Shown: positions 4,578 to 52,443, numbered from the stretch's first letter. The stretch: DNA of 64,000 nt from Camelus dromedarius (GCF_036321535.1 NC_087466.1:1612001-1676000), one strand, 5' to 3'. Program-made: numbers and translations. Notes: a model not told the origin generated them from the sequence alone.

Positions 4578-9893
<5,316 letters not shown>

Positions 9894-10563
9894 GAGCGCG
9901 GCGGCGGCGGCGGCTCGTCTGGCTCGGTCGTCGCTGGCTCCGCGGCCTCTCGGCGGCTGGTCGCAGCTCCTTCCTCCGCGTCTGGCGCCGGCACCTCCCG
10001 CCCGCTCGCTCGCTCGCTCGCTCGCTCTTCCCTCCGCCCCGCGACCCGAACCCCGACCCCTGACCCCGGCGGCGGGAAACACGACGCGATTCAAAACCAG
10101 CGCAGCTTTATTGGCTCAGGAGGCGGACACTCTCATTGTCCAGCCCGCCCCGCGCTTCCCGCCAAAACGCCCGCGGCGCATGCCCGGCCCGCCTGGTAGT
10201 CGGGGGAGCGCGCACTCCCGGCGGCCCTCGCGCGCACTTCCGCTCCGCGGCCGCGCGCGCCCCTCGAGCTTGAGGACCGGGCTAGGGGTCGGAGCGGCGC
10301 GTGACGATTACGTCGCCGGAAGTCGGGACGATAGAGACGCGCCGCATGGGCTGCGCGCGCCGGCCGACAGCCGAGCTGCCGTCGAGGCGATCCGCGGGCC
10401 CGGTCCCCTGGCGGGCGGGCGGCGCAGCCCATGCCCGTGACCCCGCCTTAAACACCGAGGGTTCGAGTCCCGCCCCCGCCGTGCCAGAGGCCCTGCGGCC
10501 TTCCCGCTCTCCGCGCGTCCCCTGTGTGCCAGGCCCTGGACGAGGTGACGGACGGACCGGACG
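9894..10563. promoter_or_regulatory. RANBP1/TRMT2A (Htf9) bidirectional CpG-island promoter
   Basis: Two divergent ATGs lie 670 bp apart. Sites seen: E2F TTCCCGCCAAAA (10156-10167), a second E2F-like GGCGGGAAA (~10071), CCAAT (ATTGG 10110-10114), a GC box (~10143), NRF1-like GCGCATGC (~10176), and ETS sites CACTTCCG (~10234) and CCGGAAGT (~10316). Confidence 0.88.
10004..10027. repeat. (GCTC)6 tetranucleotide microsatellite in the RANBP1 5' region
   Basis: Six perfect GCTC units read directly. Confidence 0.9.
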
Positions 10564-13500
10564 ATGGATGACGAGCTCGACAGCGGAGTACGGAGAAGGG
10601 AGAACCTGGCGGAGCCGGGGGCGGGCGGTGAGACGGGAGCGGGAGGCTCGCGGCGAGGAGGGCAGAGAGCCGGGCGCGCAGGTCCCAGCCAGCCCGCCTG
10701 TCTGCCGTCTCCACCCAGGGCCGGGCGCACGTGCAGGGCCCCGACCAGGACGGCCCCGGCGCTCCGGGCAGCCCCGCGGCCCCAGGACCCCAGCAGGAGG
10801 AGGAGGAGCAGGACGCCGAGGCCGCGGGGCCTGGGGCTCCGCCTGGGCCCTACAGTTACATCCGGGCGGGCCTGTTCACTTCGGAGATCTTCAAGTTGGA
10901 GCTGCAGAACGTACCGCGCCACGCCAGCTTCAGCGACGTGCGGCGCTTCCTGGGCCGCTTTGGGCTGCAGCCCCACAAAACGAAACTCTTCGGGCAGCCT
11001 CCCTGCGCCTTCGTGACATTCCGCAACGCCGCCGAGCGCGACAAGGCCCTTCGAGTGCTGCATGGCGCCCTGTGGAAGGGCCGCCCTCTCAGCGTGCGTC
11101 TGGCCAGGCCCAAGGCTGATCCCATGGCCAGGAAGAGGCAGCGTGAGGATGAGGGTGAGCCGCCGGCCCCACTGGCCACGTGCATCGCTGATGTAGTCAC
11201 CCCTCTTTGGGCCGTGCCCTACCAGGAGCAGCTTGAGCGGAAGCGGATGGAGTGTGAGCAGGTGCTGCAGAAGCTGGCCAAGTGAGTGTGGGTGTGGGCA
11301 CCCCTGGCAGAGCTCCTGTCAGCTCCCTGCTCGCACAGCCCACCTTGTGCGTTGGACATTCTCTTGGGGAGCTAGCCACCAAGATCCCTGTTGTTAGCAC
11401 TCTGGACGTTGAGATCCCAAGTCGGGGAGAGTGGCCCGGGAGGGCAGGGGCAGCCGGCTGAGCACAGCCTCTGCCCTACCTTGCCCCACAGGGAAGTTGG
11501 GAGCACCAGCCGCGCCACGCTTCCTTGGCTGCCCTCACAGAGGCACAAGCACAACAAGGTCTGCTGCCCCCTGGAGGGGGTCAGGCCGTCACCCCAGCAG
11601 GTCAGGCTCCCTTCTGCTCTCATAGCTTTTCCTGGCCCCTCCCTGCTTTGCATTTGCGCCTGGTATTCCCCACGTGACAGGTGTTGTCAGCCTTGTCCCC
11701 TCGACCGTCAAGCCCTGTGGGGAACCGGGGCCTCGCTCAGCGCCATCTCTCACTGGCTGCGGTGCTCCCTCCAGGCAGGCGTGCAGGCCAGGCAGGCTAA
11801 GGGTGGGCATGTGTCCGTCCCCCTCCGGCTCTCCCCTACAGACCGAGTACCGCAACAAGTGTGAGTTTCTGGTCGGCATCGGGGTGGATGGGGAAGACAA
11901 CACAGTTGGCTGCCGACTGGGCAAGTACAAGGGCGGGACGTGTGCCGTGGCAGCCCCATACGACACCCTGCACATCCCCGGGGCCACCAAGCAGGTGGTG
12001 AAGGCCTTCCAGGAGTTCATCCGGTAGGACACATGGCTGGGTTGGTGGCTCCAGGACATTATGAGGCAGTCTGGGTCCTGCCTGGTGGGGTGGGGGGGTC
12101 CTGCGATTGTGGTCTGGTGGGTGTGGCCGGAGGAGGGCAGGGAGGCTGATCGTCCAATCCCGGTCAGCAGGTATTAGGCATTCAGGGCTGTCTGTGGCTC
12201 CCACAGGTCTACTCCATACTCGGCCTACGACCCCGAGACGTACTCGGGCCACTGGAAGCAGCTGACTGTGCGCACCAGCCGCCGTGGCCAAGCCATGGCC
12301 ATTGCCTACTTTCACCCCCAGGTCTCCAGCGGGTGGCCTGCTTGGGGAGGGATGTCCGGGCCGGAGTGGACTGTGAAACAGCCTTAACCAGTCTTCTCTA
12401 CTGCCTGCTCCAGAAACTGAGCCCTGAGGAGCTGGCGGCGCTGAAGGCCTCTCTGGCCCAGCACTTCATGGTGGGGCCAGGCAAGGCCAGTGGGGTGACC
12501 TGCCTCTACTTCGTGGAGGAGGGACAACGGTGAGTAGCCTGGGTGGTGTGGGGTGGGGCAGGGCAGGTTCCTGTGAGGACTGGTGATACTGACAGACCCA
12601 CCCTACTGCTCACAGAAAGGCTCCTAGTCAGGAGGGCCTGCCTCTGGAGCACGTGGCTGGGGACCGGTGTATCCACGAGGACCTGCTGGGATTGACCTTC
12701 CGGATCTCCCCTCATGCCTTCTTCCAGGTAGCCAGAGCCCCTGGGGGTCACAAGGATGCACGGACGGAGGCCTGGTATGATGTCAGGATAGGCGTGGGGT
12801 TGGCGGGCCAGAGCGGCAGTGAGGGGTTAGCCTGCCGTGGTCTGGGAGAGCACCCGGGCGGAGAGCCACAAAGGTGTAAGGTAGAGAAGGGTCACAAGCA
12901 GTTCCTTTGTCATTAGTTAGACCCTGGGGACAACCCAGCAGGTGGGTCATATATGGGGCGGGAGTCGGGATGACAGGGGCTTTGGTGGGGTCATCAGTGC
13001 TCACTGCAGGGCTGGTGCTCCCTCACATTCAGTACTCAGAAGAAAGCATGTTTGGGTGGGCGTTGGCACTGAGTTGTTTCCTAGAGCCCGGAGACTAGGC
13101 GTGGTGGATGGGGGGGCCCAGGCAGTTAGAGGGAGGGAAGGGGGTGAGAGAGCCGGGGTGCCCAAGCGGATGAGTGCTTGGGGATGCAGGCACTGGGGGC
13201 AGGCTGGCCTGGGCAGCAGGGCTGCTCTTCTGTCCTGGCCTGCACTCCAGGTGAACACCCCCGCGGCCGAGGTGCTCTATACAGTCATCCAGGACTGGGC
13301 CCAGCTGGACTCGGGGACCACAGTGCTGGACGTGTGCTGTGGCACCGGCACCATCGGCCTGGCCCTGGCCCGGGTGAGCCCTCCTGCCCTCCCCACACGT
13401 TGTCACCTGCTCTGTGACCCCTAGCCTATTCCAGATCTTCCTCACCCACCCTCATCCCCCTGCACAGGCCTCGGTGGGGTAGGGTGGGGTGCTATCGGTC

Positions 13501-28700: not shown

Positions 28701-29829
28701 CCGGCCCCCACGCCCACGCTCCTGCCCCACAGGCAAGCGTCACAGGGAGACATCAGTGATGACACAGAACGGAAGTGCCCTGGGGGCCTAGGTGGGCCTC
28801 TATGGTGCGGGATCATCTGAAAAACAAATGGGGTGAAACCGACAGCTGAACCGCACTCAGGCGGTGCTCGCGCCACCGGGGAGCGCAGCCAGCAGCTCCT
28901 TCCAGCTCAGCTGGGACAAGGGCACGAGGCAGACCTGTCAGCCAGACTGTCATTAGCAAAGTTGGAAACCTGGACTCCTTACAGCTTTCTCTTCTCACAT
29001 GGGTGTTTTTTTTTTTCCTCTGCAACATTAGCTTTCAAAAGATACTGCGGGTCCCAAATACCTCTCTGGGTTTTGCTAAGAGGGCTCCAAAGCGGGGCCG
29101 CCAACATACCTCGTAGGAGAAATTCAAGGCCTCTTCGTCCACTCTGTCTCTNNNNNNNNNNNNNNNNNNNNNNNNNNNNNNNNNNNNNNNNNNNNNNNNN
29201 NNNNNNNNNNNNNNNNNNNNNNNNNNNNNNNNNNNNNNNNNNNNNNNNNNNNNNNNNNNNNNNNNNNNNNNNNNNNNNNNNNNNNNNNNNNNNNNNNNNN
29301 NNNNNNNNNNNNNNNNNNNNNNNCCGACACTCCCGCCAAAGGGACAAGCATGCACGTCTCCACTGACNNNNNNNNNNNNNNNNNNNNNNNNNNNNNNNNN
29401 NNNNNNNNNNNNNNNNNNNNNNNNNNNNNNNNNNNNNNNNNNNNNNNNNNNNNNNNNNNNNNNNNNNNNNNNNNNNNNNNNNNNNNNNNNNNNNNNNNNN
29501 NNNNNNNNNNNNNNNNNNNNNNNNNNNNNNNNNNNNNNNNNNNNNNNNNNNNNNNNNNNNNNNNNNNNNNNNNNNNNNNGGGCCTTAGAGAAGGATCCTC
29601 TGGAGAGAAGAGACGCTCCGTAGAAGTTGAGCGGGTCCTCGGCAGGGGGTTCGGCCTGTCCATCACCACCAGAGCCAACGTCCATTACCTCTGCATCACT
29701 GGACGTTTGCAGGGGAGGTGGTGGAGACTGTTCACGGGGCAGCACTTGGAGGGGGCAAGCTCGGTTCTCCATCACCGCTCCTCCTGCGGGCTCACGCGGG
29801 AGAGGAGAGGGACTCTCACATGTCTCCAT
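16780..29829 (-). CDS. DGCR8: Microprocessor complex subunit DGCR8 (773 codons, 13 coding exons; N gaps in first coding exon)
   Basis: Exons 29829-29110 ([10 protein letters not shown].., 720 nt including Ns), 28677-28518, 26698-26556 (WW: [20 protein letters not shown]), 26394-26112 (heme-binding IPCL), 24942-24745, 24525-24424 and 23770-23672 (dsRBD1), 22506-22424, 19628-19528, 19323-19217 and 18286-18159 (dsRBD2), 17406-17293, 16863-16780 (..PLCTVDV*). All junctions are GT-AG, total 2322 nt. Confidence 0.97.
20005..20200 (-). mobile_element. MaLR LTR fragment (MLT1C/D-like)
   Basis: Resembles the recalled MLT1 consensus: ..aacaacag..ctggaggctagagtcc..ccttcctgg..cagcctctgg..catcctcggcttgtggctgcatcac. 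Confidence 0.6.
20620..21800 (+). mobile_element. Old L1 ORF2 fragment (endonuclease to RT region), antisense to DGCR8
   Basis: A-rich strand. ORF 21343-21639 contains [41 protein letters not shown], homologous to the L1 RT motif [36 protein letters not shown]. Confidence 0.85.
21860..22095 (+). mobile_element. L1MB-type 3' end
   Basis: gacagaaag..gtgactgctaatgggg..tttctttt..ccactgaactgcacagtttaaaagggcaaaattt..aataaag matches the recalled L1MB/L1MA 3'UTR end. Confidence 0.75.
22525..22572. repeat. Degenerate hexamer array (YGAGGG)8
   Basis: TGAGGG TGAGGG TGTGGG CGAGGG CATAGG CAAGGG CGAGGG CGAGGA. Confidence 0.8.
29152..29323. other. N run (172 nt) in DGCR8 exon 2
   Basis: Seen directly. 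Confidence 0.99.
29368..29579. other. N run (212 nt) in DGCR8 exon 2
   Basis: Seen directly. Confidence 0.99.
29651..29735 (-). ncRNA. MIR1306: mir-1306 hairpin (DGCR8 mRNA hairpin B, inside the CDS)
   Basis: 5p arm CCACCTCCCCTGCAAACGTCCA (29721-29700) and 3p arm ACGTTGGCTCTGGTGGTG (29681-29664) match recalled miR-1306, and the arms base-pair. Confidence 0.93.

Positions 29830-39292: not shown

Positions 39293-52443
<13,151 letters not shown>

What the first reader, a model, noticed from the sequence alone, without database searches (positions are those of the whole stretch)
10880..11185. Both-strand coding: RANBP1 alternative first exon inside the TRMT2A RRM exon
Seen: an 82-codon minus-strand ORF from ATG 11125 (another in-frame ATG at 11185) ends at GAA|GTGAAC and can splice in phase to RANBP1 exon 2, giving a 283-aa protein. 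The peptide has no acidic residue until its last codon, is rich in R/A/L/S (like a mitochondrial presequence), and contains KRPRKRR (like a classical NLS), while RanBP1 normally carries an NES. Recalled: the human 278-aa isoform starts with a very similar peptide. Caveat from the sequence: the antisense frame shares third codon positions with TRMT2A, and stops could only arise at Y|TA or T|CA sense junctions. Its openness and similarity may therefore be a passive by-product of TRMT2A conservation. A minus-strand AATAAA (10112-10107, overlapping the CCAAT box) lies in what would be this isoform's first intron.
Basis: partly seen in the sequence, partly recalled or inferred. Interest (0 to 1): 0.72.

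Follow-up and report, generated by a model that had tools for sequence, protein, structure and literature searches.

The report
Known RANBP1 upstream exon, mirror-image ORF
The antisense reading frame inside the TRMT2A exon is real and matches the already annotated long human RanBP1 isoform, but its openness, start codon, splice donor and basic "signal-like" peptide are by-products of TRMT2A's own coding sequence and are broken in several other mammals, so it is ordinary.

Summary
Every sequence statement checks out. There is an 82-codon minus-strand ORF (11125-10880), an in-frame ATG at 11185, a GAA|GTGAAC donor, phase-0 joining to RANBP1 exon 2 (8854), a 283-aa product, KRPRKRR, and AATAAA at 10112-10107.

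It is already annotated. The same exon and junction (LKISE|DTHEDHD) form human RefSeq NP_001265568.1, "ran-specific GTPase-activating protein isoform 1" (278 aa), and appear in models from other primates and bats.

The ORF is no more than chance gives. Stops in this antisense frame arise only opposite TRMT2A Tyr codons or T|CA junctions. Synonymous recoding of the same TRMT2A exon keeps an ATG-ORF of at least 82 codons in 25-45% of trials.

The ATG, the donor GT and KRPRKRR mirror conserved TRMT2A residues (DPM, LFTSE, RRFLGRF). The same 89-codon ORF exists in fish.

Of eight mammalian DNA sequences, four carry lesions:
- goat: ATG lost
- rhinoceros: ATG lost
- hyena: in-frame TGA
- fin whale: in-frame TGA

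Synonymous divergence in the overlap (0.263) does not differ from other TRMT2A exons (0.305, p=0.30).

Verdict: a known minor alternative 5' exon; dual coding under selection is not supported.

The parts
10880..11125 (-). 82-codon coding part of the candidate alternative RANBP1 first exon (MGSALG...KRPRKRR...LKISE), antisense to the TRMT2A RRM exon and sharing third codon positions with it
   Evidence: translation; 88-96% identical to the N-termini of the annotated long isoforms P0025 and P0027
11126..11221 (-). In-frame upstream stretch: ATG 11185-11183 (shared only with hyena), closed by TAG 11221-11219, which lies opposite the TRMT2A CCC|TAC (Pro-Tyr) junction
10874..10882 (-). Weak 5' splice site GAA|GTGAAC (GT 10879-10878). 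It matches 5 of 9 consensus positions and has no G at -1 or +5. The GT is the complement of positions 1-2 of the Thr codon in TRMT2A LFTSE.
   Evidence: GT kept from fish to mammals; counted by eye against MAG|GTRAGT
10856..10879 (-). Read-through tail VNRPARM plus TAA (10858-10856, opposite TRMT2A AGT|TAC). Together with the 82 codons it makes the unspliced 89-codon ORF that Ensembl-derived entries list in many species.
10909..10911 (-). Second weak donor GGTAC|GTTCTG after ...AWRGT. This is the site used in the primate 86-aa, goat 96-aa and fin-whale models.
8718..8856 (-). RANBP1 exon 2 (8854-8718) with acceptor AG 8856-8855, phase 0, begins DTHEDHD.
9877..9893 (-). Canonical RANBP1 exon 1 coding part: ATG 9893, MAAAK, donor AAG|GT (GT 9878-9877). 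It lies inside the would-be first intron of the long form.
10731..11283 (+). TRMT2A RRM exon. The frame is open from 10731, the exon ends at 11281 (AA|GTGAGT), and the conserved core is 10842-11281. This is the older frame that dictates the antisense ORF.
   Evidence: weak Pfam RRM_1 match, E 0.0046; substitution ratio nonsyn/syn 0.05
10040..10200 (-). Canonical RANBP1 core promoter block with CCAAT (10114-10110) and AATAAA (10112-10107), 91-95% identical in six other mammals. An upstream-initiated transcript must read through it.

Best explanation
This is the local copy of an already annotated, minor alternative 5' exon of RANBP1 (human transcript variant 1 / isoform 1). It lies on the opposite strand of the TRMT2A RRM exon, upstream of the shared bidirectional promoter. 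Its reading frame is a mirror image of the TRMT2A coding sequence and is not a separately selected gene.

The antisense frame shares third codon positions with TRMT2A, so each antisense codon is fixed by the first two letters of a TRMT2A codon:
- Stops appear only opposite Tyr or T|CA junctions.
- The ATG is the complement of Pro(CCC)|Met in DPM.
- The donor GT is the complement of the Thr codon in LFTSE.
- KRPRKRR is the mirror of RRFLGRF written with CGN and CTN codons.
- Acidic residues could arise only opposite TCN serine codons, and the three internal Ser codons are AGC.

In this species the ATG, frame and donor happen to be intact. A minus-strand transcript starting above 11125 that uses the weak GAA|GTGAAC donor would therefore encode a 283-aa RanBP1 with a very basic 82-residue tail. 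This step is inferred, not shown.

Most such upstream transcripts are expected to take other routes: reading through (89-codon ORF acting as an upstream ORF), using the other weak donor at 10911, or ending early. The long protein, if made, is a low-level by-product without conserved function.
For: - **Already annotated.** The cluster of P0025 (42 members) contains human NP_001265568.1 / F6WQW2 'isoform 1' (278 aa), tarsier XP_008057889.1, two bats and aye-aye. Gorilla G3QES4 sits in another cluster. All have ...LKISE|DTHEDHD.
- **Passive openness.** The ORF is bounded by the two Tyr-derived stops, and none of the seven CA-codon junctions is preceded by T. An ORF of at least 82 codons with an ATG is kept in 25-45% of synonymous recodings. 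A fully recoded antisense peptide is still 73% identical to the observed one.
- **Older than any function.** The same 89-codon ORF, with the same start and stop, occurs in Arapaima and Scleropages. Shorter database models beginning at the same Met come from Xenopus, tegu, platypus and birds; the basic motif is absent where that region can be read (fish, tegu, platypus).
- **Lesions.** ATG->AAG in goat (K also in Cervus P0039). ATG->ATA in rhinoceros, through a synonymous Pro change in TRMT2A. In-frame TGA in hyena (codon 51) and fin whale (codon 74), each through a synonymous TRMT2A change. That is 4 of 8 lineages, although the loci were ascertained through long-isoform annotations.
- **No extra constraint.** 4-fold divergence is 47/179 in the overlap against 182/597 in other TRMT2A exons, p=0.30. 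Among TRMT2A-synonymous changes, antisense-nonsynonymous ones number 15 observed against 20.2 expected, one-sided p=0.065. For comparison, the TRMT2A frame itself has a ratio of 0.05.
- **Heterogeneous models.** Public models from this exon include the unspliced 89 aa (pig, donkey, peccary, rodents) and other-donor tails (primates, goat, whale).
Against:
- The antisense N/S ratio is below 1 (0.58-0.72), so weak constraint cannot be excluded with 78 substitutions.
- ORF, ATG and donor are intact here and in primates, bats, pig, peccary, donkey and several rodents.
- Under uniform codon choice, 'no acidic residue' (4%) and KRPRKRR (5%) are individually uncommon. Codon-family inertia and GC-rich Arg/Leu usage explain them.
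- The human record is a curated NP_ accession, so at least one supporting human cDNA presumably exists.
Confidence: 0.72

Rival explanations
1. A genuinely functional, lineage-restricted long RanBP1 isoform. In lineages that keep the ATG and frame (this species, primates, bats, suids), the basic extension with KRPRKRR acts as a nuclear (or mitochondrial) targeting signal. It sends a fraction of RanBP1 to another compartment, as a young overprinted coding exon.
For: - ORF, strong Kozak-like context (GCCATGG), donor and phase are intact here.
- The long form is annotated in human RefSeq and several orders.
- The antisense N/S point estimate is 0.6-0.7.
- KRPRKRR fits the K-K/R-X-K/R monopartite pattern (established knowledge).
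Against: - Independent start losses and stops occur in goat/deer, rhinoceros, hyena and fin whale.
- Every 'signal' feature is dictated by TRMT2A codons.
- There is no excess synonymous constraint.
- The donor is the weakest in the gene.
- No paper on such an isoform was found.
- From established knowledge, RanBP1 is kept cytoplasmic by its export signal, and nuclear accumulation is reported as harmful.
Confidence: 0.1
2. The exon is not used at all in this species. There is no minus-strand start above 11125, and the ORF is only an antisense shadow of TRMT2A, so nothing is transcribed or spliced from it.
For: - No read evidence was obtained.
- No gene call with the 89-aa product is on record.
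- The ORF is fully explained by chance.
- The donor is weak.
Against: Ensembl/NCBI-derived models starting at the same ATG exist in more than 20 vertebrate species, including the close relatives pig and peccary. This suggests that antisense transcription through this exon is widespread in CpG-island bidirectional promoters.
Confidence: 0.13
3. The upstream exon matters at the RNA level only. Upstream-initiated transcripts carry a long leader with the 89-codon upstream ORF and further AUGs. Alternatively they are cut at the conserved AATAAA just above the canonical start. Either way they would tune or insulate the shared TRMT2A/RANBP1 promoter rather than make protein.
For: - Many database models are unspliced 89-aa forms or short out-of-frame forms.
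- CCAATAAA followed by a U/GU-rich stretch is invariant in 7 mammals.
- Several further ATGs lie between 10856 and 9893 on the minus strand.
Against: Conservation of the AATAAA is explained by the CCAAT box and neighbouring factor sites. No expression data were obtained here, and no regulation has been demonstrated in the literature searched.
Confidence: 0.05

Closest known systems
Human RANBP1 transcript variant 1 / isoform 1 (NM_001278639, NP_001265568.1, UniProt F6WQW2; 278 aa) and its predicted orthologues
   Same: Same position (antisense in the TRMT2A RRM exon), same ATG, same 82 codons, same donor and same junction LKISE|DTHEDHD. The peptide is about 88-96% identical.
   Different: Here the product would be 283 aa because the C-terminal exons differ in length. 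Use of the exon in this species is not shown. A second in-frame ATG at 11185 is present here and in hyena only.
Chance antisense ORFs in GC-rich coding exons (the antisense frame that shares third codon positions is stop-poor)
   Same: Stops are possible only at Y|TA and T|CA. Stop density here is 1.9% of codons against 4.7% for random sequence. The ORF ends exactly at Tyr codons.
   Different: This one also sits upstream of a strong acceptor in the right phase, so it can be grafted onto a real protein. That is why annotation pipelines pick it up.
Overprinted / dual-coding mammalian exons under selection in both frames (e.g. GNAS XLas/ALEX, INK4a/ARF)
   Same: Two reading frames of one DNA stretch, both present in curated protein records.
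   Different: Those show conserved open frames and reduced synonymous rates. Here the frame is broken in half of the sampled lineages and synonymous divergence is normal. The overlap here is also antisense, not same-strand.
Mouse Htf9-a (RanBP1) / Htf9-c (Trmt2a) bidirectional CpG-island promoter (Guarguaglini et al. 1997, cited in PMC6821191)
   Same: Head-to-head arrangement with a shared promoter. E2F-like, GC-box and CCAAT elements are conserved. The arrangement extends to fish.
   Different: That literature describes the canonical start. No report of the upstream antisense exon was found.

Membership tests
Orthologue of annotated RANBP1 long isoform (human isoform 1) | First coding exon antisense within the TRMT2A RRM exon, starting MGSALG... 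| tested here: met
   the 82-aa peptide aligns end to end with residues 1-82 of P0025, P0027, P0030 and P0037.
Orthologue of annotated RANBP1 long isoform (human isoform 1) | GT donor right after ...LKISE and in-phase junction to exon 2 (DTHEDHD) | tested here: met
   The sequence permits it. The same junction appears in P0019 and P0027.
Orthologue of annotated RANBP1 long isoform (human isoform 1) | The junction is actually made in RNA of this species | not testable with these tools
No exact gene call is on record.
Dual-coding exon under selection in both frames | Second frame stays open, with its start codon, across the clade | tested here: not met
   Goat ATG->AAG, rhinoceros ATG->ATA, hyena TGA, fin whale TGA: 4 of 8 lineages.
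Dual-coding exon under selection in both frames | Excess synonymous constraint in the older frame over the overlap | tested here: not met
   4-fold divergence 0.263 against 0.305 in other TRMT2A exons and 0.319 in the rest of the same exon. Fisher p=0.30, four independent species pairs.
Dual-coding exon under selection in both frames | Purifying selection on the second frame among changes silent in the first | tested here: inconclusive
   15 antisense-nonsynonymous changes observed against 20.2 expected, z=-1.5, one-sided p=0.065. Only 78 substitutions were available.
Dual-coding exon under selection in both frames | Openness beyond what the first frame's protein and codon usage give | tested here: not met
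   25-45% of synonymous recodings keep an ATG-ORF of at least 82 codons.
Classical monopartite NLS / mitochondrial presequence | Basic cluster K-K/R-X-K/R; or Arg-rich, acid-free N-terminus | tested here: met
   KRPRKRR is present, with K+R 20, D+E 1 and pI 12. This is a pattern match only. The motif is the mirror of TRMT2A RRFLGRF and is absent in fish, tegu and platypus.
Classical monopartite NLS / mitochondrial presequence | Demonstrated targeting activity or a dedicated predictor score | not testable with these tools
   No TargetP, MitoFates or cNLS predictor is available, and no localisation data exist. Pfam finds no family in the peptide.

The most novel reading that the evidence does not exclude
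In the lineages that keep it intact (including this species and primates), the mirror-born 82-residue basic extension is translated. It would work as a targeting signal that places a small pool of RanBP1 in the nucleus or mitochondria. That would be a young coding exon born by antisense overprinting of an RRM domain.
Probability: 0.08. Interest if true: 0.55.

Novelty: already known. Interest (0 to 1): 0.15.

Why it matters
If the long form were functional, it would be a rare mammalian case of antisense dual coding, and it would add a differently localised RanBP1 to Ran-cycle biology. The evidence points the other way.

The case is mainly a worked example of how a conserved domain on one strand can manufacture a conserved-looking ORF on the other strand. 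That ORF comes complete with a start codon, a splice donor and a signal-like motif, and annotation pipelines, curated ones included, then propagate it as a protein isoform. The practical use is as a caution for isoform catalogues and proteomics databases.

Tried and rejected
**Steps that failed or gave nothing**
- **Read laying** on window 8500-12500 with runs X5, X32, X26 and X24.
- Exon 2 was handled only by coordinates and in local scripts. Later database steps used the alternative-exon peptide, or other species' database proteins by id. These were a search with P0019 (a gorilla protein spanning the exon-2-homologous residues) scored on residues 1-82 only, and exact look-ups of full-length long-isoform proteins.
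- **The look-up of encoding contigs** with the 89-aa read-through ORF: nothing on record. The tarsier locus returned no DNA. One look-up was not sent for lack of a free slot and was repeated.
- **The search of protein representatives** with the 82 aa found only short models of 50-104 aa. The long isoforms were reached only in two steps, via gorilla P0019.
- **Literature.** No paper on a long RanBP1 isoform or an upstream RANBP1 start was found. F6WQW2 appears only as a protein-group label and NM_001278639 only as a gene identifier.
- **Earlier scan notes** added nothing.

**Considered and not run**
- Structure prediction of the peptide was not run. A shallow alignment would give an uninformative low-confidence model.

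**Considered and rejected**
- 'No acidic residues' as evidence of a presequence. It depends on three Ser codons being AGC, a codon family that apparently also holds in the fish, whose antisense peptide is equally free of acidic residues.

Full report
**Locus.** The window holds a non-human mammalian TRMT2A (+ strand) / RANBP1 (- strand) head-to-head pair.
- RANBP1 coding exons on the minus strand are 9893-9879 (MAAAK, donor AAG|GT), 8854-8718, 7261-7104, 5876-5748, 5219-5154 and 4693-stop.
- The TRMT2A RRM exon runs on the plus strand to 11281 (AA|GTGAGT). It has a weak Pfam RRM_1 match.
- The region is a 69% GC CpG island.

**Observation.**
- The minus-strand ORF from ATG 11125 to GAA 10880 is 82 codons, and a further in-frame ATG lies at 11185.
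- The donor is GAA|GTGAAC. Exon 2 begins at 8854 after ccacag, and both first exons end in phase 0.
- The joined CDS gives 283 aa.
- KRPRKRR is present, and the peptide has 20 K+R, one D/E (the last residue) and pI 12.0.
- AATAAA at 10112-10107 overlaps CCAAT.

**Already annotated.**
- A whole-library HMMER search with the 82 residues found nine short 'uncharacterized protein' entries of 50-104 aa. They come from goat, deer mouse, birds, platypus, tegu, a teleost and Xenopus. Nearly all start at the same Met, and their tails differ.
- A word-indexed search found a 12-member cluster. It holds the unspliced 89-aa ORF of peccary, pig, donkey, Mus spicilegus, Chinese hamster and ground squirrels. 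It also holds primate 73/86-aa forms named 'RAN binding protein 1', and gorilla G3QES4 (237 aa) with the junction LKISE|DTHEDHD.
- Searching with residues 1-82 of that gorilla protein reached a 42-member cluster carrying Pfam Ran_BP1. Its members include human NP_001265568.1 / F6WQW2 'ran-specific GTPase-activating protein isoform 1' (278 aa), tarsier XP_008057889.1, two bats (286 aa), aye-aye, hyena, rhinoceros and deer.
- The exon and junction are therefore public annotation. NM_001278639.2 is even used as the human RanBP1 identifier in PMC11269297.
- No paper studying the long form was found.

**More than chance?** No.
- The antisense frame shares third positions with TRMT2A. An antisense codon is comp(s2') comp(s1') comp(s3 of the preceding sense codon).
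- Stops therefore need sense Y|TA or T|CA. The ORF is bounded exactly by CCC|TAC (11219) and AGT|TAC (10856). The seven His/Gln codons in between are all preceded by G- or C-ending codons.
- Keeping the TRMT2A protein and reshuffling or redrawing synonymous codons leaves an ATG-ORF of at least 82 codons in 25% and 45% of trials.
- Across eleven conserved TRMT2A coding blocks this antisense frame has 11 stops in 568 codons, which gives P about 0.20 for 82 open codons.
- Another antisense frame of the same exon is open for 251 codons.

**Mirror origin of the 'signals'.**
- The ATG is the complement of C|AT in Pro(CCC)-Met of DPM.
- The donor GT is the complement of AC in the Thr codon of LFTSE.
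- KRPRKRR mirrors RRFLGRF: Phe gives Lys, Arg (CGN) gives Arg, Gly gives Pro, and Leu (CTN) gives Arg/Ser.
- Asp/Glu can arise only opposite TCN serine codons. The three internal Ser codons are AGC.
- A completely recoded exon still yields a peptide 73% identical to the observed one, so cross-species similarity is uninformative.
- Arapaima and Scleropages have the same 89-codon ORF with the same start and stop but no basic motif. In Arapaima, trmt2a and ranbp1 are already head to head.

**Comparative DNA.** Loci of goat, two bats, hyena, black rhinoceros, fin whale, aye-aye and Arapaima were fetched and aligned without gaps over the 246 nt.
- Goat has AAG for the ATG because TRMT2A Met became Leu. 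Cervus also shows K, and the muntjac entries are partial.
- Rhinoceros has ATA through a synonymous CCC->CCT change in TRMT2A. Neither goat nor rhinoceros has another in-frame ATG.
- Hyena has TGA at codon 51 (CCT|CAT in TRMT2A), and its database model skips five residues there.
- Fin whale has TGA at codon 74 (CTT|CAG), and its model uses another donor.
- Four of eight lineages are thus broken, although these loci were ascertained through long-isoform annotations. That matches the neutral expectation of 25-45% intact.
- The donor GT is kept everywhere, as the Thr codon requires.

**Constraint tests.** Both used four independent species pairs.
- 4-fold site divergence is 47/179 (0.263) in the overlap, 30/94 in the rest of the exon and 182/597 (0.305) in other TRMT2A exons. 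Fisher p=0.30.
- Among TRMT2A-synonymous differences, antisense-nonsynonymous ones number 15 against 20.2 expected from opportunities stratified by transition and transversion (z=-1.5, one-sided p=0.065).
- The TRMT2A frame itself shows a nonsynonymous/synonymous rate ratio of 0.05.
- Weak constraint cannot be excluded, but none is demonstrated.

**Splicing and fate of upstream transcripts (inferred).**
- GAA|GTGAAC matches 5 of 9 consensus positions and lacks G at both -1 and +5. It is the weakest donor in the gene, the others matching 6-7 of 9 by my count.
- Public models show three fates: read-through (89 aa), a second weak donor GGTAC|GTTCTG at 10911 giving short unrelated tails (primates, goat, whale), and the exon-2 junction.
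- The would-be first intron contains the whole canonical promoter. That block (10040-10200) is 91-95% identical in six other mammals, including CCAATAAAG followed by a U/GU-rich stretch.

**What could not be done.**
- Sequencing runs that hold the exon were found.
Whether the exon is transcribed and spliced in this species therefore remains untested.
- I worked beside those places and sent none of their letters to search tools afterwards.

**Verdict.** The feature is the known long-isoform exon of RANBP1, and the dual-coding reading is not supported. The best explanation is a passive mirror ORF grafted onto RanBP1 by a minor upstream start and a weak donor (confidence about 0.7). Interest is low.

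Noticed in passing
window 10040-10200 (minus strand): The canonical RANBP1 core promoter is 91-95% identical across goat, two bats, hyena, rhinoceros and aye-aye, which is more conserved than the neighbouring coding exon. Invariant elements are GCATGCGC (NRF1-like), TTTTGGCGGGAA and TTTCCCGCC (E2F-like), a GC box and CCAATAAAG. The AATAAA is followed by a U/GU-rich run, so it could also end upstream-initiated transcripts.
   Followed up: partly
window 10909-10911 (minus strand): A second weak donor, GGTAC|GTTCTG, lies after ...AWRGT. It is the splice point implied by the primate 86-aa, goat 96-aa and fin-whale database models. The sequence is intact here.
   Followed up: partly
window 9199-9342 (minus strand, RANBP1 intron 1): The tail of the goat model P0001 (…LLSKSTDF…) matches the translation of this stretch. 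This suggests an occasionally used exon inside RANBP1 intron 1 that gives a truncated product.
   Followed up: no
window 10564-10740 (plus strand): The TRMT2A RRM-exon frame has no ATG before 11123. The likely start, ATG 10564 (MDDELDSG...), is in another frame. A short intron (a GTGAGA donor near 10634 and CAG acceptors near 10712-10735) or an assembly indel must join them. This was not resolved.
   Followed up: no
L008 555-11993 (Arapaima gigas): trmt2a and ranbp1 are head to head in a bony-tongue fish as well, so the gene pair arrangement is ancient. An independent genome annotation calls the 89-aa antisense ORF there a 'hypothetical protein'.
   Followed up: partly
window 10880-11125: The Ser in [10 protein letters not shown] is shared with pig, peccary, goat and fin whale, whereas other orders have Arg. 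Together with 92% identity to the whale over the RRM core, this suggests the window comes from a cetartiodactyl.
   Followed up: no
window 29152-29579, 42359-42506: Three runs of N (172, 212 and 148 bases).
   Followed up: no
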